Assembly: GCF_023055435.1 (NCBI RefSeq)
Contig: NW_025964257.1
Coordinates: forward strand, 2,356,001 to 2,420,000
Source: Haliotis rufescens
Taxonomy: Eukaryota
DNA length: 64,000 nucleotides
Direction: 5' to 3'
Shown here: positions 538 to 63,773 of the stretch, in pieces
Layout of the letters: the number at the start of each line of letters is the position of its first letter
Position numbering within the stretch: position 1 is the stretch's first letter
Made by a program: the position numbers and the translations under genes
Notes under the pieces: generated by a model
The model's database searches: none
What the model was told of the DNA's origin: nothing
What the model saw: the letters and a program-made list of their open reading frames with translations, nothing else

Positions 538-3500
538 TTCCTCTGAGCAGTGTTACCAAGGACCACTACATCTGTCTCCTGTGTCGCTGTCTCCAACCCA
601 CCGCCGTCCACGACGTTGTACAGAGACGGGATCAGTGTGGCCACCAGCCCAGCAGCAGTAGAGGGATACACTGGCTGGACAGCCACCATCAACTACCAGC
701 TGACAAGGCACCAGTAGGAACTCCCTGTACTACTGCCAGGCATCCAACAAACAGACTACTGTCAACTCTACCTATTCCTATCCGGAAAGTAAGCAATTTT
801 ATAAATGACAAAAACATAACCATAACCTCGCCAAAACATCATAAGTACACTGGATACATTGACTGATGCCGATGATATTGACACCAATACAAAGGACTGT
901 ATGATATTTTGTTATATAATGTATTTTCATATTAACTGCATCGTTGAATTCACTTTCTATGCAGTTGCTGTCAGCAGTGTGTCTCTAACAACCATCACAT
1001 CCGCCAACCAGGAAGTTGGATCTGCTGAGGGTCAACCGCTGACCTTGACCTGTGTGACCTCGGCCAGTTACCCTGCTGCTACTGTCACGTGGTACAAGAA
1101 CAGTGTTGAGGTAACAGTGGGGATCTCCAGTAGCAACACCGTCACATCTGGAGTGGCTGTCCAGGCAACCAGTGCCGTGACCTTCACCTCTGTGGTGAGG
1201 TCAGACCTGGGTCACACAGTCTACTGTAGAGCCACCAACATCCACACCCCCTCCCTAGTACAGTCTGACAGTGAACAATGAAAACTTGACAAACTGAACC
1301 GTCAAGTTCAAATGGAAATTGCATGGTGCACTGTAAAGACAAGTTATGTTAGAAGATATTTGTAACTATTGAAAGAACCAAAATATTTGACACTCGTCAA
1401 ACCGACGAATATGGTATTGCACAACTGTTTGAACAACACAACATTGTAGTTATACACATGATATTACTATATTGCAGACGGACCAGAACAAGTTGGTTTT
1501 ACACAGTCAGACAACGCTGTAGCTTTCGAGAAAAGAAACCTGACCTTGACTTGTACTACCACTGCTTATCCCAACCTGACCTTCACCTGGGACTACAGTG
1601 ATGGAACCCCTGTAGGTGGCAGCACGGGGCCTGTGGCAGGATCTTCGACCCGGTGGTCCCAAACTCTCACCTTCAGGCCAAATAAAGACAAGACTGCTGT
1701 GAGGTGTAAGGTCAGAAACACCAGTACATCAGCAACTCAGGCTGGTTTTGCGTCTCTGGAAGTCAAGTGTGCGTTTTCAAAAGTGTTGCCAATATATTAA
1801 TAGAGTTTCAGATTTGCATTTAAAGTACATTTGAATGTTTTAGATCATAGATAAATATAGGGGGACAGCAGAGTGATACATAAAGAGGCTATTATCACTG
1901 ACTCTTACATGGACGGTGGATACTGTTCGACGAAAGGACTTGTTTTGCAAACTTATCATGGTTGTTTCAGACCCACCACCTGTCCCTCCTTCCATCACAA
2001 AGTTTCAGACTCTGATGTTTGAAGGAGACCAAGAGACAATCATCTGCTCGGTGACAGGAGGAAATCCTCTAGCTACTATCACGTGGTCCTGTCCAGGCAC
2101 TGGATCAGCATCGGTCAGTGACAGTGGTCAGACCAGGACATCTACCCTCTCCTTCACTGTCAGCAGGAGTCAGAACGGTCAGCAGTGTCAGTGTCTGGGG
2201 GCGTGGCAGTATGGGGGATACAACCAATCTGATGTCAGGACCTTCAGTGTCAGTTGTGAGTATCTCAAACTGTTTCTGGAGGGATTGATGGGTACAATTG
2301 GTAACTCCACATCATTCGGTTAAGAATGGAGTATAAAGCCTGTCTGATGTAAATGACACCTCCTTTGTCACACGGACAAAATACAAAACTATGTATTCAG
2401 TAAACATGAAGTCAATACTTTTTTCATGTGATACTCATTTTATACTGCAGGTCCCACAAACCCACAACCACTCAATGCCGAATATAACATGGCAGGTGTA
2501 ATAGCAGGAAGCACAATAGGAACCCTCCTTCTTACCTTGCTGATTGGAGGACTAGTTCTGATTGTCCTCTATAGGAAGGGGTTCAGGTTTGGGAACGTCT
2601 TGAAAGGTATGTTGTTGAATTTCATTTTGGTGCTGCGATATCTCATTTGAATGTGCCGTCAAAAGATATACATGAATGATATGCGTTAAAGTAAAAGTTA
2701 CCCAGGAATCTAAATCATCACTGACTCAGAATGAGCACATACAATTTAGGAATGTATATGAAATTCATAATAATATAAGAAATATGCACTACAGTTTATG
2801 TTCAGTCATTTACGTTTTACATTTCATATTTTCCATTTGCAACATGTTCCACATGTTCCGTCATTTGTAATGTTTGTATTACAGCATACTATAAAATGAA
2901 TCATCTTTTTTTCAGGATCTGCTTAACCAAAAAGGTATACACAATGTATGAATTAAACGTTTTTAAATAAGTTCTTTTGTAATAAGATAAATGTCCTTTA
3001 AAATCAGAAAAGAATCATATGTTGAAGATGTTCCTTTCCATTATACATTGCCATAAACGGACCTCATGTTACTTTTGTAGGATCAGACATCCCGAAATTG
3101 AAGAAATGGAAAACATTGGTTATTCATCCTTGGGTAGGTTGAAGTCAGCATTGCTGGTCGGAGGATTAGTTTGGTCACAAACATGCCTGTGCCGACTCCG
3201 CGCTGAAGCCGTATTAATCGTATTCTGATTTGTTGCAGATCAGATCAACAGTCAAACTCAGTACTCAAACATGGATAGAGAGGTGTCGGAAAAACAACAT
3301 TACACACAGTTGAAGATTTATGAAAATACAAACGGTAAATGGATAATTTGACGTTCTATATACAATAGCAGTTCTCACTCGTACACTCAGTGACGGCACT
3401 GCCCGATTATCGGCATGCGAGTAAACGTTTTGTTACGTTTAGACGAGTCTATGACATATAAGTTCTTTGGAAATGCGTTACCAATCATATTTTCAGTCGA

Positions 3501-3827
3501 GCTCAAAGCAGAAACAAGTACCTACGAAGACATGACAGAAGCTCCTCCGGTATCCTACGAGTCCATCGGAGCATCTCCATACCAAAACAGCGGCGCTCAA
3601 CCTCAAGGTAACCACTACTTAGAATATTTATGCCCCTGAAAAGAATGACAGCGTGCATAACATATTGTACACACGGTATGATTCAAGTTTTAAAGAATAC
3701 ACTTATATTTGCTACTGTGTCCTGATGTTTACCCTGTCATCGTTTGACTTTTGATTATCTTGAAATTATTTTCTGGATCTTAATTCCATGTGATGCGTTT
3801 TCAGATCCTGACTATGGAAACAAGTGA
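538..3827 (+). pseudogene. Gene A: IgSF type-I receptor (at least 4 Ig, TM, multi-Tyr tail), 5' end outside window, disabled
   Basis: Exons 538-788 (Ig; two frameshifts, TAG 715-717), 965-~1278 (Ig; 3' end and donor lost, TGA 1279-1281), 1478-1768 (Ig), 1971-2255 (Ig), 2451-2606 (TM, AGVIAGSTIGTLLLTLLIGGLVLIVLYRKG), 2916-2934 (19-nt microexon with in-frame TAA 2924-2926), 3081-3133, 3239-3334, 3497-3607, 3805-3827 (DYGNK*). Splice sites and phases match the paralogs. Confidence 0.8.
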
Positions 3828-6995: not shown

Positions 6996-9900
6996 ACTGA
7001 TACATTCACATCCGGAAAAAAACAACCCGTATTCAATAACAGACCGGATCTTCATCCGCAGTCACTGTGGTCGACAAATGATACTATTGTAGTGTTACCT
7101 ATTCACTCAAGCTGCAACGCGAATGTGGTCTCAATGTTTACTCGGGTGTATTTATAAACCAGGAAGTAAATATCACATTATGAGGGGTGGCCAGCTGTCA
7201 ACCCAGGTATAGGAGAACGTATTCAAGGAGGGACAGCCCTGCCACAAAGGTGAGACAATATATTGGGTCATGCTTCAAACACACACATTTTCAGATAGTT
7301 TAACCAGCGTTTAACAAAATCTAGACTAATTTGCTTGTGTACGTTTAGCAGCATGGATTCCTAGCTTCCCATAGGCAACTACTTATATTGATATTCAACA
7401 CGCCTTACAGCACAGATAATAAGGTGCTATATATAACTAATGCTGATCTGTCATTTGAGTCAATAACTCCACTGGGAGATCAGTAAGGACGATGTAATCC
7501 GAGACTCAGGGGTAAAGTTTAAGACGACAGCAGTCAATGTTTTTGTTGTAGTTTGAAATAGGTTGAAATGGTACAAAGTTACAGTAATCACGTGACAGAA
7601 ATCACACTGGGTCCGATTGAACAATGTTCCAGGTGCGGAGACCCGCTCTGTCCTTACTACAAGTTGACGTTTTTGGTGGTGGTGCAGGCGGCCGCAGCCA
7701 ACGCCGGGTCTAGCCGTGCAAGCTGTCCGCCCCTGTGTGACCCATGTACATATAGATATGTAAGATCCGGAGACCTAGGGAGGTGTTAACTGACAGTAAT
7801 AAATCACGCTTTGGATTAAGGGTTTTGGAGGCGATGTGCTGAATATTTGCTGTGTACATTAAATAGACAAACGAGATGGAATGTCGGTGCACTTTGGAAA
7901 CAAATACTGAAGCAATTAGGTAATCATTTAGGTATGTTTGATCAATGAAATATTAAAGAAACCTATGGTTTCCACAATGACAAATACATCAAATGGATTT
8001 CCCTTTCGTATATGCCAACTTACTTCATGATCAGCTACTCATACACTTGATCCGTTCAGCAATATTCAGATGCATGGATATCATTAGGAACGTTCATCTT
8101 TCACAAAGGACACCAGATTGAAAAACTATATATGCACATATTTCATCAAGTAAAAGAAACTAGCCACACTTCTCTTAATTCAAGGTTATACACTTATTGA
8201 GTTTTAGTGTTTTAAACCCGCTTTCAACAGAAGTTCAGTTATATCAGGGCATGTCAGCTCACAGTGTAAAGATCCGACGTGACGTAGATATCACACTGTA
8301 CCACTTAAACACCACGAGCACAGGCATGGTTCTGAGAAAACAAAAGTCCTAATGCGAATGAATTTTGGATTCGAACGTGTCATTAAAGGATGGAGACATG
8401 CTCACTTTATACTTTCACAACTTGAAGATATCTGCCACTTAAAGAAGTTATGAAGAAAAATTTAAAACAAAATTATTCATTCATACAAACATGCAACTTC
8501 ACTATTCTTACAAGGCACAGGTAAGAACCCTATCAGATTATAACTAAATGTGTAAGTCTCGAGATGGAAATGTGTACTATTCTTTAGCAAAAAAATATTA
8601 CCTTTTCAGAACACTCCTATCAATGGCGTCCCTTCCTAACGCGGCAACGATTTTGCTTGCAGTTAGCTTCATGAAAGGTATGTCAGGCTTAACATTAAAT
8701 GACCCACTGCACATGTATTATCAATTAAAATTGTTTTGGAACCCAACTTGCATTCTCTCCAGAGTAAAAGTCTTATGTGAGAGTGTTCCGTGTTTCCGTG
8801 TTTAGCTCCAGATGTTGATGGGGCAGTGACAGTATCCGGGTCAGGAGGTACAGGGATACCCAACCAGCAGGCTCTGACACTAAGATGCAGCTACACTGTG
8901 ACATCAGGGGATGTTGTTACTTCATTCGCATGGAGGAGGCTGGAGGGCAACTCTCCGCAGTGAACATAGTCTCAGGTTCAGTGACTCCCCAGAGAGCTGT
9001 GTTCTGGGACTCCTGGGGGAACAAGGGCGTGTTTGTTGGTGACTACACCTCCTCCCTGGACATCCAGCTGCATGCCAGTCACGTGACATCCAGCTATGCC
9101 GGGACATACAGTTGTCAAGTGAGTGGACTGTCAGGTTCTGGACGAGTGGATGTCACTGCCTCTGTGTTGGGTAAGTATATGATGGACATTATTATGGATA
9201 GAAGGGGCAAGGTTGACCTCCAGGATTACATGGACCATATGCATAGATGTCATTGCCTCTGCTGTGGTGTATGTATGTTATTATTATGTGTGTGTGTGTG
9301 CGTGTGTGCGTGTGTGTGCATTGGTATTATAACAGAAACATTGTTGGGGCCATTTGCCACATTTATCACAAATCAAAAGGTGCAATTTATGTCTTTAAGT
9401 AGCATGTTATGTGTACACAGTTATCATTGTGTAAGTGCAAGAACTGTTTAATTGTTGTGGGAACTGAAGGAGCTGTATTCATATGAGACACGACATGTGA
9501 AATGAATATTGAAACAAACAGGTGTCCCATCAATATCTGGTCTGCCGTCCATCTACCGAGTGATCGAGTCATCCCGTCTCAATGTGGACTGTAGTACCTA
9601 CACCACACCAGGCAACCCTCCAACAACAAGCTACACCTGGACCTATGGTTCTACTGTCAGTGCTGGGGCTGTACTTGATAGAAGCAGAATCAGCAGGAGT
9701 CAGGGAGGAAACTACACCTGTACTGCCAGCAACACTCAGGGGTCAGACTCGGCCTCAGTCAATGTGGATGTACAGTGTGAGTAATTGCAAAATCTTCTCC
9801 AAAATGTAATTTATTATGATATTATACTAATGAATACAATTATTATCATTATTGTATAATTTGTATTTTGAACAAATCATGCCATAACAGTTTACATAAC

Positions 9901-10744
9901 AGAGTGTTAGGAGTCATGTATGATTTACTGTAGAATAACAAGTGAATTTACATGTATTTTGCTAAAACAGCAGTCATTTTAATATCGCTTATGGATTTGT
10001 AATTTCCACCTTTCAGATGTTCCTTCTATATCCGGACTACCACCAGTTCAGACTGTCACAGAGTTCTCTAATCTAAGGATAGACTGTAGTACCTACACCA
10101 CACCAGGCAACCATCCAACAACAAGCTACACCTGGACCTATGGTGGTTCTACTGTCAGTACTGTGGCGGTACTTGATAGAAGCAGAATCAGCAGGAGTCA
10201 GGGAGGAAGCTACACCTCTACTGCCAGCAACAGTCTGACACCAAGTGGGGGATCTCAACAACAGGGGACAGCAACAGCACAGGTCAATGTGGACGTTCAA
10301 TGTGAGTCACGGATTTGCATGTGAATTTGTTACAGACAGACTCATGGGATACCAAATCCACATTTCGTATTTTGTTTCAAAGGATTATGATCCGTCTGTG
10401 ACCTAGTTTGACAGTATCTCTGTTTAAATCAGAAGCCGAGGAAACAGTATTTGTAGTTGTGTAACAATATGACAGTTACAATATCTAGGTTATCATGGCT
10501 ACCAATAGCAGGTAAAATACATGTATAACAATCGTGTTTACTATGTAAATGCAGACAATTCACTCATTCACAATCCAAATTACTCACAAGTCTCTTCACG
10601 GGCGGAAGAACTCTCAACCATGTATGGTGACATGCTGTATGCTATGGTGCCTAACAAACTGTCAAGCACTTTTAAATTGTCCTAAGACAACTCAGAATTA
10701 CCGCACTAGGATAACAACAGTTTCTGTGTGTTCTTGCTACCATA

Positions 10745-11038
10745 GGGGGCACGGGTGGCCCAGTCGTCTAAGGCGCCGCGATTTGCTGTGCAGAGTTGCG
10801 TCCCTTGGGCGCGCCAGAAACCTATGATTGTGGGTTCGAATCCCGGTTCGCCCCGATTATGTTTCTAGGTTTGTCAGCACCATACCCATGCTCGTGGGTT
10901 TCACCAAAGTGGTAAACGTCTAAGACCTGCATCACTTCGGGCTTTCCTCCCGCATTAAGCTGACACGCCGTGATTTAACTGGAATACTGTTAAAAGCAGC
11001 GTTAAACCCAACTCACTCACTCACTCACTCACTCACTC
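10745..11038 (+). mobile_element. tRNA-derived SINE, family 1 (~290 bp, (CACT)n tail)
   Basis: Pol III A box (tggcccagtcgtctaagg) and B box (ggttcgaatcc); tail ttaaacccaactcactcac; homologous to 48828-49106 and 62456-62728. Confidence 0.85.
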
Positions 11039-12701
11039 TTGCAACCATATGCACTGTTGTCTTTGACAAACTCCAAAAACACTCTCTTCAAAAAGAAGAA
11101 AGGCAAAGCCAGATTTGTTAGAGATAGGAAAATACATTTATACGGTACAAGGTATTGAGCCAAAATGTTGTGGAGAGAACACTTGGTGATTGTGGTCGGT
11201 ACATAGGAAATTCCAAGGACAGTCAGCTACCATCAATAAGGCAGATGTCCCCCGTTGGAATCGATGGCGGCCTGGCATCCTTCTGCCCATGGAAGAGATG
11301 GATTGCATGTCTTTGTTGTGATCATTTTGATCCGGGAAATTTGTCACTGATACATTTACATATTAAACATTTAAAAACAATAGTGATGGTTTACTCATAT
11401 AGAAAGATTGTATGTAGAATTATTCTTTCTTATGGAAATTTGTTTGATGTCAAGTACAAAGATGTTCCTGTATTGCAATTTGAGCATATATATGCTTATG
11501 TTACCTCTCCTTTTGATTAAATAGTTTATTCCGCGTTATAGTTGGTTGTTGTATGGCTGTCAGTGTAAACATGAAGTCACAGGTACTAAATGAAATTGTG
11601 TAATACATCCCTCTAGGTATGAAATAGTCATATACAAATCTAAACTAGCGCTAGTATTGTGGTAAAAAAGTCCGTTGGGGAAGTTCGTTTCATAAAACCA
11701 GAGATAGACAGATTAACATGTTAGAAATGTGTAGTACATTATCAGTGTCTTTTTCAAAATCCTAAAAGGGTATCTGTGGATATGCTACATTTAGTTTCTT
11801 GCGGCTTTTCTAGGGTACAATAGTACAAGGACATTCATATCCATATGCACTACTCAACACTTAAATGTGGAAGTGCATGTGTTGAATTCAGTTATGGAAC
11901 TCTTGTTTCTTTTCATACTAATCCATACACATGTCCACTCCAATGTAGAGACTATACCCTACATGTCAATACTGTAATGGGTTATATTTTCAGATCAGGC
12001 CAGTATAAGTATGTTTACTGCCAACTCACTCAGCGGCATATTGACAGTGAACGAGTCTGATCCGGTGACCTTGAGATGCCAGATTGATAGTAACCCAAGG
12101 TCAATCATCAGATTACTGAATGGAACTGAGGAGTTGACAAGGGCAGATAACTCCATGACAGCAGAATATAGACTGGAGTCAGCAGACTGTAGACAAAGAG
12201 GGAACTACTCCTGTACTGCCACTAACAGCATTGGGTCAGCCAGAGGGTGGAGTTGCTAGTCAAATGTGAGTAATCACTCAGCAGATCCGGTGTACTCACT
12301 GTAGAGTTGTAATTATTGCCATTTACTAACTCTTGCAGGCTGTTATTGAAAACAAATGTATTGGCTGTGTTAGGCTTGTATATTGTGTTCCCTTTTGTCC
12401 AATGTTAATTCTGCCTTGCATAAAAAACAAATATCATTACTGGCATATTCAACTAAAAAGGTCAAACTCTCGTTTAAATGGATACAAAAATGCAAAAGAA
12501 GATAATCTTGGAACTAAGGGATTATGCTCCGCCCAGTTGTCGAGCAAAGAAGGTCTGATTCAAGTCATTCATAACTCACAATTTGTTTGGTCTTCTTACT
12601 GATATGTTATAATGCATACTATTCTAAGTACACAATGTATCTATTTGACACTGATACATCGTCTTTGTCTAAACGTGATATTCACGTGTTGCAACTATGA
12701 C

Positions 12702-16900: not shown

Positions 16901-17171
16901 ATTTGTTTTAGATGCAGTCAACACTCCGGCTCAGTACACAAGTTTGGAGGAAAAGGCACAAGATAAACAAAATTACTCACAGCTGAAGATTTATGAGAAC
17001 ACGAAAGGTAAATGAGCCGTTAACATTTATAATAGTATTGAATGTCCAGTATTGCAGTATGTTACTGTCAGATTGGTACTGACAGCATTGTAAACATCGT
17101 ACTACAACCAAATCCGAATTGAAACATGAAAATGAAAATATTACTTTCTGAAGAGTATGTATGTACACACA

Positions 17172-46109: not shown

Positions 46110-46182
46110 ATGTTTACCTGTGGATATCTCACATACATTTCACTTCTGATTCTGGTGGATGTAGGACAGATTCCCCGTACAG
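46110..46182 (+). CDS. Gene D probable signal-peptide exon
   Basis: MFTCGYLTYISLLILVDVGQIPRT, then G|gtaagg (phase 1), joining DSAPVL. Confidence 0.6.
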
Positions 46183-52100: not shown

Positions 52101-55100
52101 TTACGAAATTAGTGGACTTTCTATGGTATCTGACCGAGTGAAAGTTTACGAGTTACGTAAAAATGGTATCTAACGAGAATGAATGTGGTATTTTATATTA
52201 CCCACGTTAAATATATATTAAAGTGTAATTACATAACAACTTACGTTCGTTGACAGACCAAACTGAAACCGTTTGCAAAATCTGGTTGCGCATGAATAGT
52301 GATATATTGTTTACATTTCTATGCATACGCCTTAACAACACGCGCCTGCAGTTGTGTTTGGAAACACAACATCGCCAACGCTCAAGATCCTTTTGGAATA
52401 ATTTCACGTAAGCGCCACGTACGCTTTGGACAAACAGTCGGTCACTCGCACTGCCCGTATCCGTGCTGTGCAATCAAAATGGTTCGGTTTCCTTTATCTA
52501 TCAGCTGAATTAATATCACGTCCGTACCATTTTGGAAGAGGAAAATTAGAGTGTTCGCCAAAGGCATTTTGTTAACTGAACCACCCTATACTGAAGACAT
52601 GAAAATCAACAAACTCAGGTCTGCTTTCAATGTCATGGACAGCTTCAAACGAAGGGCAAGGACACCACCGTAACAAGAAAAGACAACAGTGATCTTCTCA
52701 CAGCGTTTATCACATTTGGGATATTTTGGGCCACATTATCAGGAGTCAGGCACACTTCCACGGAGTTTTCGAATGATTTGTATCGGAAATGTTCAGTTTG
52801 AGTGATCTGGTAGTGCAGTCGTGAACAAACTCCCGAAACAGTCCCAAAAACTACGCTGCAAAGGGGACACTGATATATGTAGATATATGTACAGCTAGTT
52901 TAAACTGTCTTCAAGTCACCATGCTCATCCATTTACGTTAAGTCTAATTGAAAGTTGGGAAAGTGGTCGGGTGCGTCACGCTCATGGGGACCCTCGATCT
53001 CGGTAGTGGTACATTGTAAATGGATAAAGCTCGATTATACAATGTCTGTTGAAGCTCTATGTATAACCTGCGCTCATGAGATTGCTTCATTTCTGTCTTG
53101 TAGTTGCAAAATTAATGACGTCTCGTGGAAAAAAAGTAGTCCCTCTGTGAAAGAGGTCACGGTTATCCAATCAAAACGAATAAAACAAAGTCAAATTGTA
53201 CGACACACGTGTGACGAACGGATTTAGTATCTTACCACCTGTATCTTCAACACGTGGGTAATAAGGATCGATGTGGCATTGAGGGGATTTAGACTCTAAA
53301 AAATGTTCAACACAAACGGAGGTGAACATTCAACTTAAGCACATGCGACTTATCAATGACTTACGATCAAGAAAGTAGTCCGTCATAAGCTGACCACAGC
53401 TCATCACCGTGGAGTAGCAAATCACAGGCAAGGAAACCGATCTCACACACATGTTTAACAGTTATCTCAAATGAGTTTTTCATCCACAGGTGTGTACAAA
53501 TCCCATTTCTGGTGAATCCCGCCGTGTTATGGCTTGAATATTGCTAAAACGGCGTACAACCATACTCACTCACTAAAGTTGGTTAATACATATTAATAAA
53601 GCGACACAATCCCTTTTATACTCATCAGAAATATCTACTGACAGAAGAGTCCATTGTATGAATTCAACTCAATCGTAAGCATTTGTTGATGAATCTCTGT
53701 CAATTAATTTGATTCGGTTGAAGACAGTATATACTCCTCACAAAAAGTTCAAGTATTATTTTCCGTGCAACATTCTCATCAGTGTTGAATGCCATCCATT
53801 GAGAACAAATTCTGGCAGGAGAATTACCTACGAATACTCGACTTAAAGCCCTTTCCATGTAGATGTTCCTGATAACACTGATAACATCGCCTGAACACAA
53901 CCACCCTCAAAACACACACGCAAAATGCACGACATGCATGTTTTACACACTTCACTCATGCACCCTGATTGCTTAAAAACTGCCAGCAAGGTCAATTTGT
54001 CGACATTAACACATTAGACATGGCTAGGCCTCACTTAAAGCCAACTGAGGCTGCTCAGATTGTTGGAATGGTACAGGGGGTCTCACCCGAACTGATGTTG
54101 CCAATCATTTTAATGTTCACCGCAGTGTCATCCCAAGAGCGATAACTCGATACCATCAAACGTGACTGATGACAGAGAGACCATGCACAGGTCGTCCAAG
54201 GGTGACAACTCCTTGTGAGGACCGGTATTTAGCCACCTTAGCCCGGAGAAACAGGTTTACTACGGCCAGATCTCTCCAGAATGACCTTCAGAGAGTTGCA
54301 GGAAACAGAGTCTCAACACAGACAGTAAGAAACAGACTTCACGCTCAGGATGTGAGGTCCAGACGACCAGTACGACGTATCCCAATGCCTGCACACCTTC
54401 GACAACATGTAATCAACGCCGTAACTGGAGGGTCAATCGCTGGCGTAACGTTCTCTTCACAGACGAGTAAGGATTCTGCCTTGACTTCAACGATGGTAGG
54501 GCACGTGTGTGGAGAAACCGTAATGAACGATACGCCAACTGTACAGTTGCTGAACACGACCAGTACGGAGGTGGAAGTTTGATGATCTGGGCTGGCATCA
54601 GGGTTGGAGACAGAACTGATCTTGTGGTCATCAGACGTGGTACCATGACTGGAGTACGGTACTGGGACGAGATTGTCACACTTGTGATCATTCCCCTGGC
54701 ACAACAAGCAGGTCCTAACTTCATCTTTATGGATGATAATGCTTGTCAACATCGAGCAAGAGTTGCCACTGATCTTCTTCAGACCAACAACATCACGCAT
54801 ATGGCCTGGCCTGCAAGGTCTCCGGATCTTAATCCCATTGAACATGCATGGGACATTCTTGGAAGGCGTGTTTATGGTCTTCATGTTCGTCCTCAGAATC
54901 TGGATAAACTTGAACAGGCCTTAAGGAGAGAATGGCAGAACATTCCACAACAGACACTTGATAAGCTTATCTGGTCAATGCCAAGACGTGTAGAAGCTTG
55001 CATTCAAGCCAATGGTGGACATACACGTTACTGAACATTGGATCATCGTTTCAAAATGACTTAAACTGCAACTTAAAGATTTTCATCTTTAACTGCAGCA

Positions 55101-58100
55101 CATTTTGCACGACTGTTTTCATGATACTGTTTATGATCATTTGTAAACCTGTTAGGCATAAACGCTTTTCAGTTCCTTTGAGGACAATGTGTGTTTGTGC
55201 TCTTTCTTTTTATTGCTTTAGTCAGTTTTTAGGTATTGTAATATTTGACCATTGACTGACACATTATAGATTTGTTGCTTAACATTTTGTGAGGAGTATA
55301 TGTTCAAGTGTTTTCACACATCAGCTGTGATGAAGCATGCAAGCTCTGTCAGCCTGTTCTGTTAACTTAAAATAAACTCACTCCCACGTTCATGATCAGC
55401 TCTACTAGTCTGGGGAAATACAACAAGTGTACACAATCTCACTAATATATACATTTTTTTAGAGATAATATCAGTTTGAAAGTTCTAGTCAGATGGTGAA
55501 GTATTCAGAGCGATCATACAGTGCGGTTCTGTGTTGATATCTATTCTTGATTGGCTGTGTTGTGTGAACTTTCAAGAGGTTCAAAGATCTCCATCAGAAT
55601 CCTAATGGTATCATTCCTTCTTACCAGCTCTTCTGGACTGGAGCTCTGTGACATTCTCTCCACAACTGACTTCTCTCCCGTCCTCTGTGACCCCACAGAA
55701 CACTATCTCCGTCAAGGTGACCACCCCGGGTGCTACCCCTGCCGCCGTCATCACATGGAGATACCAACAGGTGGGAACTGTATGCTCATCTTGATGTATT
55801 AGATCATCTTATGTGTTTGGTTTCATTAACATGATTGTTTCATTTTAGCTCATCCAGACATTACCCATGGGCCCCACCACCTGTACCTCATGACTGACTA
55901 AAAAGCTTTTCTCCTAATATACATAAATACAATTTGTTTTACATATCTCACCCTCCTCTACTTCACCAACCTCCTCCATTTCCTCAACTCTGTATATTGA
56001 CCCCTGTGTTAAAACTTACACTTTGGCTCTGTACTCCTCCTCCGAACCTTTCACCTCCTCTTCTCACCACTCAGGGTTAGTTAAAGCTTTTCCTCGTTAC
56101 GCAGAAGACCCGGGTTCGAATCCCGAAATTGGTACAAATGTGAAGCCCATTTCTGGTGTCCCACACCATGATATTGCTGGAATATTGCTATGAGTGGCGT
56201 AAAACCATCCTCGACAACTCATTCCTCATCTCTCACCCATCTCCTCGCGCCTCACCCATCCTCACCTCTCGTCACTCCTCAACTCTACCGCCCTTATCAC
56301 CACTTTTCACCCTCTCCTCACCTCCCACACTACTCCTCGCCTCTCATCCTCCTCCTCGGCTATGTAATAACTGATAGAATATGTTTCTTTCAAATTAAGG
56401 CATCATTTTTTTCACTTGTGATACATGTTCTCCACTAAGCAATCCCCTGCAGCGACTACTTTCACCTGATGATATTTACGGGCAACTTCAGGCACATCTT
56501 GTCCGAGGTACCTCTGGGGATCCACAGCTGTGCCTCAACAAATCACTAATCAGATCCAAAGCCATAATAATATCTATAAGCCCTACTACAGGTGCACCAA
56601 CAGGTACTTTATTAGAAGCACATGATCATCAAACCCTGTTTAAATATCAAAAGTCACTGAAAAAGAAAAACCCTACTACGATCAGCAGCCATCCCTAATA
56701 TTCGTAACCTTCCTTGCAAAAAAAATATGGCGAGACAAAAACACAAGAGATGAAGCCCAAGTTTGGAAAATCCTTCATTGAAGCCATCTCGAAGGCACAT
56801 CTGTGCCTGGGTTAAGGGGTACAATTGGGATGACATTCAGCCATCAAAAAGTCATAACAAAGGGCTATACACACCCTGGACTGTAAACGAGCCAAATGTT
56901 ACCACTGCTTTAACATCAGAAGTCACAGAAAAAGAAAAACCAACCCAACTACGATCAGTAGCTATCACTAAAATCCGAAATACCTGAGACAGTTGGGCCC
57001 ATATAAACACTGATGGATCTAAGAATCCAATCAACAACACAGCTATTTAGGGGAGCCATATTCATTACCAAACCCCAAGTACATTCAGTCCACCTGCCTA
57101 ACGGTCAGTCACTATTTAATACTAATAAGGAGGAAAATCATTACGCATTCAAAACTTGCTAAGTGCACGACTAGCAGCAGAAACTCAAACTCAAGACCAA
57201 ATACAGTCAATAATATTATATATGAATATACAAAATCATCGGACCATGGCAAACAGCCGAAGGTGTGTTTGGTCCCGTCTCGCATATATATTCATGGAAA
57301 TGAAAAAGCATACACACTGGCGGAGCAAGCTCTAGACAATGCATTATGACAAGGTCTGCCCATCTTACAACAAGCCTGAATCTATTGCTCATTTGAGACT
57401 GAAATGTCCAGACCATGCCCAAACGTCTGCAGCAACAAGTGATGTGGCTTTTAAAAGTCTGTCTTTTATAGCCCTATTCTGCATGCTTCCCGTGAAACAA
57501 AACACGTTTTCTATGACGCGCACGCAATTTTTTGCGTTTTTGAGATGTCGCTCACAAACAAATTAGGAATGTGTTTTGACGAGCTGTTGTTCTTCATGCT
57601 TTGTCCAGAACGTCGTATATTACTCATTCACTTATATATTTTCATATGTCTTAAGCCCGGATAAAAATACATCCAATTTCACGGTGGTGCGTTTTCAATG
57701 CTGTTCAGTATACTATATTAATATTAATACTGCACAATACTACACTATCAGTTATGTAAACCATGAACTGTTAATCATACACCAAGCGCAATTCCCATGT
57801 AAAATGTAAATACTGGACACTAAGCTCAAGCCTATTTCTGCAAGAGAGAAAACAGTACTCTTACCTTATTTACACTCAGAGATGAATTCAATTACTGTTT
57901 TATTATGCATTTACCATTATTCCCACAGTCAGATCACAACATCAGGCGAATAGGATTATGTGACACTCTCTATCCACTATCATTATGTCGTAAGAAAAGA
58001 ACTAGTTCTGGAATTTGACCGAAATCGACAAAGGTATGAAATATTCCAAAGCATGTTCTGAGGAAATTTTTTTTTTAATAACAAACCCTTTCTATCCAAT

Positions 58101-61100
58101 TATTTGATATCATGTCTTATCACTGAATAAAGACGAGCTTCTCTACCTGTAGTACTCAGGATAAGTATTGCTCATTATTTCACTAAACTGAAACATCAGA
58201 CAGTGTCTCTCCAACTACTGTTTTGTGTTTGTGTGGCGTTATTACTGTCTCTGCCAGGAACACCGCCAGTCTCACTTACTACTGTTTTGTGTTTACAGGG
58301 TGTGAGTGGCGTCCTTCCCAGCAGTACATCTTCCTCCCAGGTATCATGTCCATCAGGCCAGGTCCAGACAACCAACTCTCTGTCACTACCAGGAACACAG
58401 CCAGTCTCACTTACTACTGTTTTGTGTTTACAGGGTGTGAGTGGCGTCCTTCCCAGCAGTACATCTTCCTCCCAGGGATCATGTCCATCAGGCCAGGTCC
58501 AGACAACCAACTCTCTGTCACTACCAGGAACACAGCCAGTCTCACTTACTACTGTTTTGTGTTTACAGGGTGTGAGTGGCGTCCTTCCCAGCAGTACATC
58601 TTCCTCCCAGGGATCATGTCCATCAGGCCAGGTCCAGACAACCAACTCTCTGTCACTACCAGGAACACAGCCAATCTCACTTACTACTGTTTTGTGTTTA
58701 CAGGGTGTGAGTGGCGTCCTTCCCAGCAGTACATCTTCCTCCCAGGGATCATGTCCATCAGGCCAGGTCCAGACAACCAACTCTCTGTCACTACCAGGAA
58801 CACAGCCAGTCTCACTTACTACTGTTTTGTGTTTACAGGGTGTGAGTGGCGTCCTTCCCAGCAGTACATCTTCCTCCCAGGGATCATGTCCATCAGGCCA
58901 GGTCCAGACAACCAACACTCTGTCTCTGCCAGGAAACACAGTCAGTCTCTACAACAGACAGGTGTCTCTCACTGTCAGTGTGGAACATGACTCCTTTGAC
59001 CCGCCCACGTACACAAAGTCTGTCACTTCAAATACAATACAGTTTCCTGGTGAGTGCAAATCAACTCCAAGTCTACCTGTTGTTGACTCAAGGCCCGTAT
59101 TGTAGCAGCAGGAAAAAGAAGTTTCACGTAGTCGAAAGCAAAGAGAGTTCTTGGAAAATTCTTGGAAGTTGACAATACTTTTCAAAATTATTATATGTGT
59201 ATGTCGCAGTGAATCCATCTCATCCAGTGCGTTTTAAATAAAACATAGATGCCAGAAATGAGAAGTTACGAAACGGGATCTATTTTACTTTTATGCCTGA
59301 ACAAGGGAAACGTTGACCATGTCAATGGGTAATGATTGGGTAATGATACGCATACTTGGGTGGAGTTCAATGTTTGTTAGTGTCCGTTGATTTGAGACAC
59401 ACATAGTTGTGTCGGTATTAGCATTCACAATATATTAAACAGTAGATTTTAATACAAATAACAATATAGAAGTAGGAGATTAACCTGTTATATTTTAAGT
59501 GTAGACGTATTCTGCCAATGATGATACGCGACCATTACAGTTATTTTTTTCGTAATAAATATGTAAAGGTAAAATGATGAGTGACGTGGCATTGGTCAAG
59601 TATAATGTTTTAGTTGTGTTGAATGGAAGTTGTCACCATATTGATAGAGTTCATTGTGGGTATTCCTGCTTTTGTAATTCAAACCATACCTTCCTGTATT
59701 TAACTCTCTCCAATATAGGAAAGAGCAACCCTCTAGCAGATTTCCTGTATTCATTCTCCATACAGTTTCATTTGGGGAAACTGAGGGAGGCAACCCTTGT
59801 AGCAATTAGTTCTAAATAAATACACCACTTTTATGAGTTTATATTGTTCTACTGACACGTGTGCCAAAATATTGTGAACGGGCAAACACGACCTCACCGT
59901 CCGTAATCTACTAGTGCTAAATATACATTTCCTACTCGTCGGTTTTGTGAAAGAACTGCTTCCTGAGAAATATTTTCACTCATCAGCAAAAGCATGTAGA
60001 TTCCACACACCTGGCTGACCAATCAAAATGCAGGATTCCAACATGTCATGGAAAAAAACCCATCATATGCATGCCAAATAAATGTGTTTATAGTCCAGTT
60101 GCTGTCACAGTTTGTCAACAATATATTCATGAAGTAGTTTCTCTTATCATTAGCAGATATTCTTAAAAAAACAAACAAAACAGGCTGCAGTTTCACATTC
60201 CTTCAAATCCATCTTTCAATTAATGCAATGTTGTTACTATCTGCTAAGACGGAAACGTGTCGATTTGTTACCCGCACATGAGGTCTTATTTCCTATATGT
60301 TTCATGAAAGCATGAGGATATTATTACGTGTTTACCAAATTAATTCAGATATAAATTATGATATGGCCTTGAAATAGTTCATGTTTAGATATGTAAAGGA
60401 CTGCTATTTGATATCAAGTGCCAATGTTTTCACGTCTTACAGTCCCAGTAACGTCTGTGACACTGACAAACATCAACTCTGATTATGAGAAGATAGGACA
60501 AGCAGTGGGTCAACCGCTGACCTTGACCTGTGTGACTTCAGCCAGCTTCCCGACTTCTGCTGTGACCTGGGTGACCTTGCCATCAGGAACCACTCCTACA
60601 GTCAGCACAGAGACGACATCTGGTGTCCTGGTGAAGACCACAAGCTCCGTCACATTCACGGTCAGTAAGACTGACCAGGGGAGGAGCATTCACTGTCAGG
60701 CTGAAAACATCAACGGTCAGACATCCCCACAGTCTAACAGAGCAACACTGGAGGGTTGGTGTAAGTAGACATAGTCGAACATAGACACACTGGAGGTTTG
60801 GTGTAGATTAACATGTATCTATTAGGTTTGGTGTAAGTAGTCCCAGTCTAACAGAACTACACTAAAGGTGTAAGCAGATATATGTATCTATCAGGGGATC
60901 AGACGCAGTCTACCAGAGCAATTATAGAGCTTTGTGAGAGTAGAACTAGACGAGAGGCTTTGAAAAGTAGAAATCGTCTTACAGAGCCATACTGGAGACT
61001 TGTGTCGCAGCCACACTGGATGTTTAATGTCGTAGATACATGTATGTATTAGTGGTCAGATACTATTCGTTATAGTGTCTTTAGTTGCCTAAGATGACAC

Positions 61101-63773
61101 TGTATACGGCAACTAAAGACACCATAACGAATTTATTATGCTGAAAAGTTTACACTATTTGGTATCTTTGTCGCACATGTCATGTCAAAATGAAAACTTG
61201 ACACTTAGAACCGGTATAAACGGCAGGACCAGTACATATCTTTCCGATAAAATGCTCTAATGTAAATATAAACGTTAACAATGGAATATATAATGCACTA
61301 AATGTGAATGGTTTAAGTACAAGAGCTAAAATGGATAAAATTTTCATAACAATGCCCAACATGTAAACATAAATCTGCGGGCCACTGTAACTTGATAGCA
61401 GTCCGCTTTCCCGTAACGACAGGATGCTATCTATTCTATTGCTATGTGACGTGATTGGCGTCACGTTTCTTGTTTGTGACGTCATCCTATAGTATGTTCT
61501 ATGACGTTGCTATTTGTAACTCAATGACCTCCGTTGTAAGCTTTTTCTCTCTATTTTTTATAAATAAAGTCACGAACGTGGATTCTTTCATAAATAATGT
61601 CTGTTCTCATCACAATTAGTGATATTAAAAAACAAAACAGTATCGAATAACGAATTTCTGTACCAGAATTACCATGTGAAATATGTGAGGTGGGTGTTGG
61701 AAAATTCAAAATGGCTGTTACTGACGGCATATGGTCTCATATTAGGTCAGTAACAACCATCTTGGATTTTTACTTACGGTATACGGGCTCATTTGGGTTC
61801 AGTAGTTCTACTCTCTGATTGGGGCAATCTCACTTTGAGGCATAATAAGGTCTGATATAGCAATGCTATAGCTTTCGTGAGAGCTGAAATATGTCTATCA
61901 GAGCAACGCTGTATTCAGGCAGGCAACACAGTAGTTATATATCATTATTCCGTTTTCCAGTTGGACCAGAACAGGTTGACGTCACAATGCCCGACAAAAG
62001 TGTAGTTTTCGAGAACAGAAACCTGACCTTAACCTGTACTACCACCGCCTATCCCAACCTGACCTTCATCTGGGACTACAGTGATGGAACACCTGTAGGT
62101 GGCAACACAGGGTCTGTGTCAAGGTCGTCTACATGGTGGTCCCAAACCCTCACCTTCAAGCCTTATAAAGACAAGACAGCTGTGAGATGCCAGGTCAGAA
62201 ACACCAGAACATCGGCAACACAGACTGGTTCTGTGTCCCTGGATGTCAAGTGTGAGTGTTCAAAGATGTTTCCCTTTTATTCAGAGCATTCAGGACATTA
62301 TCAGTTTCTTTAGAAGTTACAAAACAGAACCTTTATGCACAACTCTTCCTCCCTGCAACGGCTGGACATCATATTGTGACTTTGTTCACTGCATGATAAC
62401 AAACGAGGAAGGTCTTCACAATTACATCTCTTACTTATGTCATTTATAGTAACCAGGGCACGGGGGGCTCAGTCGTCTAAGGCGTCACGATTCGCTCTTT
62501 GGAGTTGCATCCTTTGGGTACGCCAGAAACCTATGGGTGTTGGTTCGAATCCCGGTTCACCCCGATTATGTTTTTGGGTTTGTCAGCATCATACCCGTGC
62601 TCATGAGTTTTACCTGGTAAACGTTTTAGGCCTGCATCAATTAGGGCTTCCCTCCTTCATTAAGCTGACACGCCAGTGATATGACTGGACTACTGTTAAA
62701 AGCGGCGTTAAACCCAAATCACTCACTTATAGTAACCGTCTTCATTGTTCCTGTTTAAGACCCCCCATCTGACCCTCCTTCCATCACACAGTTTGAGACT
62801 GTGATGTTTGAAGGAGACCCGGAGACTATCAGCTGCTCGGTAACAGGAGGAAATCCTCTAGCTACTATCATGTGGTCCTGTCCGGGCGCCGGAGTAGCAT
62901 CGGTCAGTGACAGTGGTCAGACCAGGACATCTACTCTCTCCTTCACTGTTAGCAGGAGTCAGAACGGTCAGCAGTGTCAGTGTCTGGGGTCGTGGCGGTA
63001 TGGAGGATACATATACAACCTCTCTGTTGTTAGGACCTTCAATGTCAGTTGTGAGTATCTTTTACTGTTTCTTGAGGAAGCGATAGGTGCAATGGTTAAT
63101 TCCCCTTCATTAACGTATGTATGGAGTGTGTAGCATGTCTGAAATCAGGGATCCCTGAACATGCCACAAATTGACAGCATTGCCAAGAATCCCCCCAAAA
63201 TAATGTTCATCACATCTGTATATCACTCATTGACTAACAATTTGTAAAAATGATGTAACACGAATTAACCACCAAAAAGTGACGGTAGATTGATGGTTGT
63301 ATATCTTCAGGTGTGCGATCTCCTGTCCTGTAGCTTGCTGAGGATAAAGTAAAAATATGTACAAGCTCTTTTACCGCAACCTTTCCTGTCTCAGTGTTGT
63401 ACAATAGCTAAATGTTGCAGTTAATAACAATAGACCTCTGCAGAGATCCATTACTGTCATTGTATGTGGGCATGGGAATGGAAATAAGTTGTGTTGTCTT
63501 TGGAATCGATGGCATTTTAGAATCAATGTATGATGTATGATACCTATATCAAGCACTCTGTCTTCAGTAAATATGAAATCAATACGTATTTCATGTGGTA
63601 CTTATTATATATTGCAGGTCCAACAAACCCACAACCACTCAATGCCGAATATAACATGGCAGGTGTAATAGCAGGAACCACAATAGGAACCCTCTTTCTC
63701 ACCCTGCTAATTGGAGGGATAGTTATGACGATCTTCTATAGGAAGGGGTTCAGGTTTGGAAACGTCTTGTCAG
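46110..63773 (+). CDS. Gene D: IgSF type-I receptor SP-5xIg-TM (no FN3); tail exons lie beyond the window; open so far
   Basis: join(46110-46182,50278-50586,55628-55770,58839-59049,60443-60760,61961-62251,62760-63050,63618-63773); phases 1,1,0,1,1,1,1,1 are consistent; last two Ig exons and TM are close paralogs of gene A. Confidence 0.8.
48828..49106 (+). mobile_element. SINE family 1 copy
   Basis: Near-identical to 10745-11038; flanked by tgttgcaaat on both sides. Confidence 0.88.
50278..50586 (+). CDS. Gene D exon: N-terminal Ig domain with an extra C-x5-C pair
   Basis: FSITC...RFYK...GGCLSSGSC...LTLDI...RDSGTWSC. Confidence 0.85.
53732..55298 (+). mobile_element. Tc1-family DNA transposon, full-length and inactivated, in a gene D intron
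   Basis: TIRs TA|ctcctcacaaaa and ttttgtgaggag|TA; transposase 54020-55034 with GRPRVTT, VLFTDE (followed by TAA), FMDDNA, WPARSPDLNPIEH (DD34E); frameshifts present. Confidence 0.92.
55628..55770 (+). CDS. Gene D exon: first half of a split, Cys-less Ig domain 2
   Basis: ...NTISVKVTTPGATPAAVITWRYQQ|gtggga (phase 1 to 0). Confidence 0.7.
56070..56210 (+). mobile_element. SINE family 2 copy
   Basis: gaagacccgggttcgaatccc...gaagcccatttctggtgtccc...gatattgctggaatattgc. Confidence 0.8.
56470..57400 (+). mobile_element. Degenerate non-LTR retrotransposon fragment (RNase H-bearing)
   Basis: RYLWDPQL-like RT thumb text near 56505 and HINTDGSK (RNase H motif) at 57000-57023. Confidence 0.45.
58200..58940 (+). 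repeat. 135-bp tandem repeat (5 units plus a partial) spanning a polypyrimidine tract, AG acceptor and exon start
   Basis: ttactactgttttgtgtttacag|ggtgtgagt with exon starts at 58299, 58434, 58569, 58704, 58839. Confidence 0.95.
58839..59049 (+). CDS. Gene D exon: second half of Ig domain 2
   Basis: GVSGVLP...GSCPSGQVQTTNTLSL...QVSLTVSVEHDSF...IQFP, then G|gtgagt. Confidence 0.7.
60443..60760 (+). CDS. Gene D exon: Ig domain 3 (C2-like)
   Basis: GQPLTLTCVTSASFPTSAVTW...DQGRSIHCQAEN; paralog of 965-1278. Confidence 0.9.
61961..62251 (+). CDS. Gene D exon: Ig domain 4
   Basis: LTLTCTTTAYPNLTFIW...VRCQVRN; paralog of 1478-1768. Confidence 0.9.
62456..62728 (+). mobile_element. SINE family 1 copy
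   Basis: Homologous to 10745-11038; flanked by the direct repeat ttatagtaacc. Confidence 0.88.
62760..63050 (+). CDS. Gene D exon: Ig domain 5
   Basis: ISCSVTGGNPLATIMW...QNGQQCQC; paralog of 1971-2255. Confidence 0.9.
63618..63773 (+). CDS. Gene D exon: transmembrane segment
   Basis: PTNPQPLNAEYNMAGVIAGTTIGTLFLTLLIGGIVMTIFYRKGFRFG; near-identical to the gene A TM exon. Confidence 0.9.

What the first reader, a model, noticed from the sequence alone, without database searches (positions are those of the whole stretch)
538..63773. Tandem cluster of modular IgSF receptors: unrelated recognition heads on one conserved multi-tyrosine signalling module (candidate invertebrate immune or allorecognition receptor complex)
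Seen: four head-to-tail genes share a homologous TM exon, and A, B and C share the same five-exon tail (19/53/90-96/111/23 nt). There are two stalk classes: A and D end in the same Ig-Ig-TM block without FN3, while B and C end in the same Ig-Ig(Cys-less)-FN3-TM block. The signal peptides and N-terminal Ig exons of B, C and D cannot be aligned by eye, and nearly all domain exons are phase 1-1, so they can be shuffled freely. Two of the four genes are broken and a fifth survives as a relic. Established: clustered, rapidly turning-over Ig receptors with Tyr-motif tails characterise vertebrate LRC/SIRP/Siglec/NITR clusters and the Hydractinia Alr complex (Ig-Ig-Ig-FN3-like-TM with ITAM/ITIM tails). 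Inference: this is a lineage-specific mollusc receptor complex that diversifies ligand-binding heads by exon shuffling onto a fixed signalling module. Automated pipelines would probably label the genes only nephrin-like or hemicentin-like.
Basis: partly seen in the sequence, partly recalled or inferred. Interest (0 to 1): 0.88.

Follow-up and report, generated by a model that had tools for sequence, protein, structure and literature searches.

The report
Abalone Ig receptor gene cluster
The window is a 64-kb slice of a roughly 1-Mb tandem array of about 40 abalone-specific immunoglobulin-type surface receptor genes that share one tyrosine-rich signalling tail; it resembles vertebrate immune receptor clusters, but its function has not been tested.

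Summary
The window is Haliotis rufescens, unplaced scaffold C479:2356001-2420000. It carries four head-to-tail type-I IgSF genes. They share a transmembrane (TM) exon and a five-exon cytoplasmic tail of 19/53/96(90)/111/23 nt, all with AG/GT splice sites. All domain exons are phase 1-1. There are two stalk classes: Ig-TM, and Cys-less Ig-FN3-TM. Genes A and B are broken.

The window is only a slice. The TM exon has 37 copies and the 111-nt tail exon about 40. Nearly all lie at 1.98-3.03 Mb of C479, on one strand. RefSeq labels the genes turtle-, nephrin-, hemicentin-2-, VSIG10- or NCAM1-like. The TM+tail region finds relatives only in four Haliotis species.

The heads are not unique to each gene. 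They fall into three mutually unalignable V-like classes (B, C, D). Each class has several paralogs, and orthologs in other abalones. Whole-gene and segmental duplication is therefore the main mode of growth. Synonymous divergence differs several-fold between exons, and the identity of gene C to its +268-kb paralog is mosaic. Both show that heads and bodies have different histories.

The tail carries YSSL, an ITAM, YEN, YxxM, an ITIM (VTYESI) and YQN. An immune role is inferred, not shown. The scan holds notes, seen as titles only, on similar Tyr-tail receptor clusters elsewhere in this genome.

The parts
1..3827 (+). Gene A, a D-type pseudogene. Its 5' end lies left of the window. Parts: 3' end of the head exon with its donor inside a 91-nt x 2.6 repeat (1-241); Ig exon 553-787 with a frameshift near 705; Ig 965-1270; Ig about 1478-1768; Ig 1971-2252; TM 2451-2606; tail exons 2916-2934 (in-frame TAA), 3081-3133, 3239-3334, 3497-3607, 3805-3827 (stop).
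8623..20166 (+). Gene B, B-type and broken at its 5' end. Parts: signal-peptide exon 8623-8677; V-like head 8802-9229 (frameshift at 8942-8954); Ig 9522-9776; Ig 10017-10301 (second Cys lost); Ig4 about 11996-12238 (frameshift near its end); Cys-less Ig 14480-14776; FN3 14982-15278; TM 15790-15939; tail exons 16337-16355, 16775-16827, 16912-17007, 18615-18725, 20144-20166.
   Evidence: The 3' half equals RefSeq XP_048240966.1.
27338..38917 (+). Gene C, C-type; all exons read open. Parts: signal-peptide exon 27338-27377; V-like head 27693 or 27705 to 28031; Ig2 31837-32118; Ig3 34509-34766; Ig4 35509-35787; Cys-less Ig 36060-36356; FN3 36514-36810; TM 37568-37729 (Glu inside the membrane span); tail exons 38031-38049, 38214-38266, 38369-38458, 38596-38706, 38895-38917.
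28894..31341 (.). Array of 48 copies of a 51-nt unit in intron 1 of gene C. It separates the part that is 87-93% identical to the paralog 268-269 kb downstream (signal-peptide and V region) from the part that is 99% or more identical (Ig2 onward).
34732..35266 (+). Repeat of 9.9 copies of a 54-nt unit that duplicates the end of C's Ig3 exon together with its splice donor. Homologous arrays stand in other C-type genes.
42104..63773 (+). Gene D, D-type; its tail lies right of the window. Parts: signal-peptide exon 42104-42176; V-like head about 50278-50586; 135-nt x 5.2 repeat carrying an acceptor and an exon start, 58245-58949; Ig about 60443-60754; Ig about 61961-62251; Ig 62760-63047; TM 63618-63773.
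54166..55031 (+). Open frames that look like a Tc1/mariner transposase (by eye from the translation), inside an intron of gene D. An insertion, not part of the receptor.

Best explanation
The window is part of a multigene family of single-pass IgSF surface receptors found only in Haliotis, with about 40 genes and pseudogenes in roughly 1 Mb.

Each gene encodes a signal peptide, a distal V-like Ig head of class B, C or D, and 2-4 further Ig domains. B and C types add a Cys-less Ig plus FN3 stalk. All have one TM helix and a cytoplasmic tail of about 110 residues.

Proposed working (inferred, not shown): the distal domains bind a ligand. Clustering lets a Src-type kinase phosphorylate the tail tyrosines. 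These then dock SH2 proteins:
- the ITAM (YxxL-x7-8-YSQL) docks a Syk-type kinase;
- the ITIM (VTYESI) and YSSL dock SHP or SHIP phosphatases;
- YEN and YQN dock Grb2;
- YEGM docks PI3K p85.
One tail would thus integrate activating and inhibitory signals.

How the family grows (shown): tandem and segmental duplication, pseudogene decay, and recombination or gene conversion that leaves heads anciently diverged while Ig4 and Cys-less Ig exons stay similar across types.

The most likely use is haemocyte immune-type recognition. I put about 0.45 on that part alone.
For: Gene structure: and RefSeq models that match it.

Census: 37 TM exons, about 40 copies of the 111-nt tail exon, 21 FN3 exons and 22 C-type V exons lie on C479 at 1.98-3.03 Mb, plus small unplaced contigs C492, C532 and C602. 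The only trace elsewhere is one degenerate copy of the 111-nt tail exon, with a stop, on C576.

Range: TM+tail of P0037 gave 37 hits, all from H. cracherodii, H. rufescens, H. rubra or H. asinina.

Tail motifs in the 39 TM-bearing relatives: YSSL 39, YSQL/YTQL 37, VTYESI-type ITIM 35, YEN 34, PYQN 32, YE[GD]M 25. A canonical ITAM spacing of 6-8 occurs in 19 of 45.

Selection: purifying throughout, pN/pS 0.2-0.6.

Mosaic history: between C subclades pS is V 0.62, Ig3 0.61, Ig2 0.31, Ig4 0.24, Cys-less Ig 0.23, FN3 0.16. Between B and C types pS is 0.22 in Ig4 and 0.245 in Cys-less Ig. Gene C against its +268-kb paralog is 93% (upstream), 87% (V region), 99% (Ig2 region), then 100% at the protein level in the later exons; a 3-kb locus in the next gene, D, is 99.97% identical in DNA.

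Functional analogues in oyster: CgIgR (Ig x5, ITAM, recruits Syk; PMC6994640) and CgNCAM1 (Ig x3, FN3, TM, two ITIMs, recruits SHIP2, induced in haemocytes; PMC11841013).

Context: Ig-domain genes are enriched on the segmentally duplicated, non-syntenic Chr4 of abalones and were proposed to serve immunity (PMC12627906).
Against: - There is no expression, tissue or binding evidence for these genes.
- The tyrosine motifs are short consensus matches. Within the window only B has an ITAM-like pair, with spacing 9. A has YSNM and C has His in place of the first Tyr.
- No paired activating and inhibitory forms were seen.
- dN/dS never exceeds 1, so diversifying selection on heads is not shown.
- Two of the four window genes are pseudogenes.
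- The 99.9% duplicate block could be an assembly artefact on an unplaced scaffold.
- 'Haliotis only' rests on a word-seeded search.
Confidence: 0.6

Rival explanations
1. The genes are cell-adhesion or cell-identity molecules of nervous or epithelial tissue, like nephrin/Kirrel, IgLON, Dpr/DIP or the clustered protocadherins. Variable distal domains would give a homophilic or heterophilic recognition code. The tail would signal as nephrin's does, through phosphotyrosines that bind PI3K, Grb2 or Nck.
For: The ectodomain resembles titin, MDGA1, contactin, Robo and RPTP-delta I-set and FN3 domains. RefSeq names them after adhesion molecules. YxxM and YxN sites also occur in adhesion receptors (own knowledge). 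Variable heads on a constant tail also describe neuronal identity families.
Against: There is no ortholog outside Haliotis for the TM+tail. Pseudogene turnover and segmental duplication are high. ITAM and ITIM consensus motifs are conserved. Oyster Ig-FN3-TM-ITIM and Ig-ITAM receptors act in haemocytes (PMC11841013, PMC6994640).
Confidence: 0.2
2. The array is largely a decaying or assembly-inflated repeat of a few functional genes on an unplaced scaffold. Most copies would be pseudogenes or duplicated haplotypes with no distinct role.
For: A and B are broken. Block genes g7 and g8 lack TM or FN3. Copy pairs are 99.94-100% identical at the +268 kb offset and between C492 and C532. The family sits only on unplaced scaffolds.
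Against: There are many intact full-length RefSeq models in four species. pN/pS is 0.2-0.6 across exons. Paralogs outside the duplicate block differ by 10-30%. Non-syntenic, duplicated Ig-rich chromosomes are reported as real in several abalones (PMC12627906).
Confidence: 0.12
3. The genes encode gamete or reproductive recognition proteins, a class known to evolve fast in abalone.
For: Only the general precedent of fast-evolving fertilisation proteins in Haliotis (own knowledge), together with the lineage restriction.
Against: There is no similarity to lysin, VERL or ZP proteins. The Pfam hits are Ig and FN3 only. A phosphotyrosine docking tail is not a feature of those systems.
Confidence: 0.04

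Closest known systems
Vertebrate leukocyte receptor complex families (KIR, LILR) and fish NITR clusters
   Same: Tandem clusters of Ig-ectodomain type-I receptors. They show birth-and-death turnover, segmental duplication, unequal crossing-over or gene conversion, more divergent distal domains, and tyrosine-motif tails.
   Different: No sequence relation in the TM or tail. Every Haliotis member carries the same long tail with both an ITAM and an ITIM, rather than paired inhibitory (ITIM) and activating (short tail, basic TM residue, adaptor) forms. The stalk may include FN3. The charged TM residue, where present, is Glu.
Fc receptor-like proteins (FCRL3, FCRL5)
   Same: Multi-Ig type-I receptors in a tandem cluster whose single tail combines ITAM-like and ITIM motifs (own knowledge). 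FCRL5 is among the PDB sequence hits of the ectodomain.
   Different: Only generic Ig similarity (E 1e-12 among many IgSF hits). No FN3 in FCRLs. No tail homology.
Hydractinia allorecognition complex (Alr gene family; bioRxiv 10.1101/2022.03.04.482883, also PMC9546547)
   Same: An invertebrate cluster of IgSF genes. By that paper's title and abstract the genes lie in a histocompatibility complex.
   Different: The family was not compared by sequence here. Abalone are solitary, and no allorecognition phenotype is known for them. Allelic polymorphism was not measured.
Oyster haemocyte receptors CgIgR, CgIgIT2 and CgNCAM1 (PMC6994640, PMC11999971, PMC11841013)
   Same: Mollusc type-I receptors of Ig x3-5, with or without FN3, plus TM. 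Their tails carry an ITAM (recruits Syk, then ERK) or two ITIMs (recruit SHIP2). They bind microbes and are induced in haemocytes. CgNCAM1 has the same Ig-FN3-TM-ITIM layout as the B and C types.
   Different: They were studied as single genes, not as a 40-member array with head classes. The Haliotis tail combines both motif types. Homology was not tested, because no tool gave me the oyster sequences.
Ig-domain gene enrichment on non-syntenic Chr4 of abalones (PMC12627906)
   Same: Same genus. The enriched Pfam domain is PF13895 (Ig_2), which these exons match. The genes are described as segmentally duplicated and 'NCAM-like', and an immune role is proposed. The H. asinina relatives lie on one scaffold of 106 Mb.
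   Different: That paper reports domain enrichment only. It describes no receptor architecture, shared tail, head classes or cluster map. I could not show that scaffold C479 belongs to that chromosome.

Membership tests
Immunoglobulin superfamily (Pfam Ig_2, Ig_3, I-set, C2-set_2, V-set) | Ig-fold domains recognised by the curated profiles | tested here: met
   Several window exons exceed the gathering scores, for example Ig_3 at 39.8 and 40.3 bits, and Ig_2 at 38.8 bits. The B head is V-set in P0042 (26.4 bits against 26) and 'ig' in the paralog exon (23.9 against 21.8). D's head has no Pfam hit. A low-confidence model of it (pLDDT 57) matches only V domains, at E about 2e-3.
Fibronectin type III stalk | fn3 profile match between the last Ig domain and the TM helix | tested here: met
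   The window exons are below the cut-off (22.4 and 19.1 bits against 25). The orthologous domain in P0042 passes (30.4 bits). The FN3 profile search hit thousands of FN3 proteins.
ITAM-bearing immunoreceptors | Cytoplasmic YxxL/I-x(6-8)-YxxL/I | tested here: inconclusive
   Present in 19 of 45 Haliotis relatives; 6 more have spacing 9. In the window, B has spacing 9, A has YSNM and C has His in place of the first Tyr.
ITAM-bearing immunoreceptors | The phosphorylated motif recruits a Syk-family kinase | not testable with these tools
   Needs biochemistry. The only precedent is oyster CgIgR with CgSyk (PMC6994640).
ITIM-bearing inhibitory receptors | Cytoplasmic (I/V/L/S)xYxx(I/V/L) | tested here: met
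   A VTYESI-type motif occurs in 35 of 39 relatives and in A (VSYESI), B and C. IGYSSL occurs in A, B and C.
ITIM-bearing inhibitory receptors | Recruitment of SHP-1/2 or SHIP | not testable with these tools
   Needs biochemistry. The only precedent is oyster CgNCAM1 with SHIP2 (PMC11841013).
Nephrin / SYG-2 / Kirrel adhesion receptors (a RefSeq label) | A conserved, low-copy ortholog across bilaterians with eight Ig domains, one FN3 and its own conserved tail | tested here: not met
   Members have 4-5 Ig domains with or without one FN3. There are about 40 clustered copies. TM+tail relatives occur only in Haliotis. The PDB hits are generic IgSF.
Turtle / IgSF9 (a RefSeq label) | Five Ig domains, two FN3 domains, a long tail ending in a PDZ-binding motif, conserved orthology | tested here: not met
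   Members have one FN3 or none. The tail has about 110 residues and ends in ...DYGNK or ...DHDNK. Restricted to the genus.
LRC-type paired receptor clusters | A tandem cluster of Ig receptors undergoing birth-and-death turnover | tested here: met
LRC-type paired receptor clusters | Paired forms: a long ITIM tail versus a short tail with a charged TM residue that binds an ITAM adaptor | tested here: not met
   All 39 TM-bearing relatives carry the same long tail. A mid-membrane Glu occurs in 11 of the 28 TM exons read, but always together with the full tail.
Hydractinia Alr family | Sequence homology, extreme allelic polymorphism and control of allorecognition | not tested

The most novel reading that the evidence does not exclude
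Abalones carry a genus-specific, haplotype-variable immune receptor complex of about 40 genes that works like the vertebrate LRC or the Hydractinia Alr complex. V-like heads of several ancient classes would be recombined onto a homogenised stalk and a dual ITAM/ITIM tail. The recombination would occur in introns that hold minisatellites duplicating splice junctions. This would give a germline-encoded, individually variable recognition repertoire in a solitary mollusc.
Probability: 0.3. Interest if true: 0.8.

Novelty: new member of a known kind. Interest (0 to 1): 0.55.

Why it matters
If these receptors act in haemocytes, abalone would offer a large and tractable example of an invertebrate multigene immune receptor complex. 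It has a defined signalling tail and head classes, and it sits in a genome region already reported as non-syntenic between haplotypes. That would allow direct tests of how germline receptor diversity arises without somatic rearrangement. It would also give candidate loci for disease resistance in farmed and endangered abalone. The family shows as well that automatic names (nephrin, turtle, hemicentin, NCAM) hide a single lineage-specific receptor family.

Tried and rejected
Expression is untested.
The cluster was therefore mapped through coordinates from the genome search.
- FN3 profile search of the representatives library: giant multi-FN3 proteins dominated. Only the single-stretch hits P0036, P0037, P0042, P0044, P0077 and P0083 were useful.
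- ESM Atlas with TM+tail: only sub-threshold look-alikes such as SCIMP, LST1 and opalin (0.86 or less). I treat them as leads, not evidence.
- PDB sequence search: generic Ig and FN3 hits, and none for the tail.
- Positive selection: no exon has dN above dS.
- Tree incongruence: the AU tests are borderline (p 0.086 and 0.044).
- Profile-profile comparison of head classes: no significant similarity beyond the short stretch around the second Cys.
- Literature lead: a 'protein turtle homolog B-like' transcript is induced in H. discus hannai haemocytes after Vibrio challenge (PMC11250055). Its best hit is XP_046336404.1, which lies outside this cluster's accession range, so it is not linked to this cluster.
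- No paper cites the cluster's accession numbers.
Exons were searched by reference, and full-length comparisons used RefSeq proteins that the tools returned.
Full report
**Identity of the sequence.** The window is G000:C479:2356001-2420000, + strand. The genome has 1.33 Gb in 615 contigs. C479 is 3,095,103 bases long. RefSeq proteins of Haliotis rufescens that match the cluster are recorded on a contig of exactly that length. The organism is therefore the red abalone and the scaffold is unplaced. The window holds no N and nothing human-like.

**Check of the observation.** An all-against-all comparison of stop-free segments shows four sets of paralogous + strand exons. Pfam confirms Ig domains in 16 exons and gives weak fn3 matches for two. 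In the related protein P0042 the fn3 domain passes the curated cut-off.

All have AG/GT boundaries, and their phases are 1-2, 2-1, 1-1, 1-1 and 1-stop. The RefSeq model XP_048240966.1 ('nephrin-like, partial') is letter for letter the 3' half of gene B, which validates these exons independently. Every Ig, FN3 and TM exon tested is a multiple of three in phase 1-1. The signal-peptide exons of B, C and D end in phase 1.

Gene A is broken by a TAA in its 19-nt exon and by a frameshift near 705. Gene B is broken by two frameshifts and a lost Cys.

- A is a D-type gene that runs off the left edge of the window.
- A and D share three Ig exons plus the TM exon.
- D begins with a signal-peptide exon at 42104-42176.
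- C reads open in all 13 exons.

**The window is a slice of a much larger array.** In the whole genome the TM exon has 37 matches at E below 1e-6 and the 111-nt tail exon about 40. Almost all lie on the + strand of C479 between 1.975 and 3.03 Mb. A few lie on the small contigs C492, C532 and C602. The only trace elsewhere is one degenerate copy of the 111-nt tail exon, with a stop, on C576. The FN3 exon has 21 family copies and the C-type V exon 22.

The 30 loci around TM exons split cleanly into two groups. Where the stalk is an Ig exon like A's, the TM exon is 78% or more identical to A's. Where the stalk is Cys-less Ig plus FN3, it is 66% or less identical. The TM and tail therefore travel with the stalk.

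**Head classes.** Every head seen in the window recurs there:
- a B-type gene whose head is 82% identical to B's;
- a D-type gene whose head is 77% identical to D's and which holds the same internal repeat;
- six more C-type genes.

Among 46 relatives from four Haliotis species, 23 carry the C head, 10 the B head and 4 the D-type N-terminus. Heads thus define subfamilies older than the divergence of these species; they are not gene-specific novelties. The classes cannot be aligned with each other. Profile-profile comparison finds only the short stretch around the second Cys. B and C heads are V-set by Pfam. D's head has no Pfam match. A low-confidence model of it (pLDDT 57) resembles only V domains.

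**How the family evolves.** Whole-gene and segmental duplication dominates. Several pairs of 3-kb loci about 268.4 kb apart are 99.94-99.97% identical, introns included. Even so, the exons of one gene do not share one history.

For the same pairs of C-type genes from two subclades, the proportion of synonymous differences is:

| Exon | pS between C subclades |
|---|---|
| V | 0.62 |
| Ig3 | 0.61 |
| Ig2 | 0.31 |
| Ig4 | 0.24 |
| Cys-less Ig | 0.23 |
| FN3 | 0.16 |

B-type and C-type genes have unalignable 5' halves. Yet they differ in Ig4 and Cys-less Ig no more than C-type genes differ among themselves (0.22-0.25). Per-exon trees agree: the branch between the two C subclades is about 1.25 changes per site in V but 0.14 in Ig2.

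Gene C gives a concrete example when compared with its paralog 268-269 kb downstream, which I infer encodes the RefSeq model XP_048241008.1 (P0167). Identity is 93% upstream, including the signal-peptide exon, 87% around the V exon, and 99% around Ig2. The later exons are 100% identical at the protein level to P0167. The switch lies in intron 1, which holds an array of 48 copies of a 51-nt unit.

This is what recombination or gene conversion between tandem paralogs produces. It does not tell whether heads are moved or bodies are homogenised. The AU tests on the Ig4 plus Cys-less Ig tree are not decisive (p 0.086 for C-type monophyly, 0.044 for B-type). An assembly artefact cannot be excluded for the near-identical block.

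dN/dS is highest in V and Ig3 (0.56 and 0.54) and lowest in Ig2 and FN3 (0.17 and 0.21), but it never exceeds 1. Across 26 loci, stalk, TM and tail exons have pN/pS of 0.2-0.6.

**The tail.** An alignment of 46 relatives shows a conserved series of tyrosine motifs:

| Motif | Count |
|---|---|
| YSSL | 39 of 39 |
| YSQL/YTQL | 37 of 39 |
| VTYESI-type ITIM | 35 of 39 |
| YEN | 34 of 39 |
| PYQN | 32 of 39 |
| YE[GD]M | 25 of 39 |
| Upstream YxxL with canonical ITAM spacing 6-8 | 19 of 45 |

The counts out of 39 refer to the TM-bearing relatives.

The 96-nt exon, which carries the ITAM, and the 111-nt exon, which carries YxxM, the ITIM and YQN, are both phase 1-1. RefSeq models exist that lack the 96-nt exon, or that lack the TM exon together with three tail exons. 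Splice variants could therefore change the signalling, but this is not shown. The reading of the motifs as SH2 docking sites rests on established consensus rules and on oyster precedents. It does not rest on any test made here.

**Comparison with what is known.**
- They are not orthologs of those genes. The TM+tail finds only Haliotis proteins. The ectodomain gives only generic IgSF hits in the PDB. The ESM Atlas gives only sub-threshold look-alikes.
- The closest working analogues are vertebrate LRC, FCRL and NITR clusters, the Hydractinia Alr complex, and the oyster haemocyte receptors CgIgR (ITAM, Syk) and CgNCAM1 (Ig x3, FN3, two ITIMs, SHIP2).
- A 2025 paper reports that the Ig_2 domain (PF13895) is the top enriched domain on the segmentally duplicated, non-syntenic Chr4 of abalones, including H. 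rufescens and H. asinina. It suggests an immune role for these 'NCAM' genes. That paper probably covers this family at the level of domain counts. It does not describe the receptor architecture, the shared tail or the head classes. I could not place C479 on that chromosome.
- No paper cites the cluster's accession numbers.

**Limits.**
- Expression could not be tested, because the tools for sequencing reads were not available.
- Only a fifth of the cluster could be read as sequence.
Exons went by reference, and full-length comparisons used proteins that the tools returned.

**Verdict.** The modular receptor complex and its mosaic evolution are real. Free shuffling of unique heads is overstated. 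An immune or allorecognition function remains an inference.

Noticed in passing
window 1-241, 34732-35266, 58245-58949; also L031-L050 block positions 95812-97179, 153114-154244, 177882-179139, 27978-29134 (-): Minisatellites that duplicate an exon end with its GT donor, or an AG acceptor with an exon start. They recur at splice junctions of A, C and D and of their paralogs, with different copy numbers. They might offer alternative splice sites or act as recombination hot spots.
   Followed up: partly
G000:C576:2057578-2154000: A second cluster of about a dozen V exons, 39-52% identical to the C-type head. They often stand as pairs about 370 nt apart. No copy of this family's TM exon is found there, and the single tail-exon copy on C576 lies far off at 455 kb and is degenerate. 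The same head type may therefore also be wired to a different membrane module.
   Followed up: no
window 37568-37729 (gene C TM exon); L001-L030 TM exons: One mid-membrane position of the TM helix alternates between Glu (LLIEG) and Gly (LLIGG). Glu occurs in 11 of the 28 H. rufescens TM exons read. It is mostly found in D-type genes, in gene C, and in the TM exons of loci L026 and L029.
   Followed up: partly
C479:2385000-2491000 against C479:2653500-2759000: A duplicate block offset by about 268.4 kb, 99.94-99.97% identical over introns, inside an older duplication of similar period (87-93% identity). It is either a very recent segmental duplication or conversion, or an assembly artefact.
   Followed up: partly
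window 54166-55031 (+); weaker relics at 17401-17876 (-): Open frames that look like a Tc1/mariner transposase inside receptor introns. Related copies occur in the 200-kb block.
   Followed up: no
window 27431-27533; also 10825-10974, 18730-18984, 19462-19827, 40773-41010, 48904-49068, 55927-56228: A dispersed element of about 100-170 nt, with copies 95-99% identical on many contigs of the genome. It may be a young SINE-type repeat.
   Followed up: no
   Followed up: partly
RefSeq models P0183/P0186, P0185, P0036: Annotated isoforms or genes that lack the ITAM exon, lack the TM exon plus three tail exons, or end in an alternative C-terminus without a TM helix. These hint at soluble forms or forms with altered signalling.
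   Followed up: no
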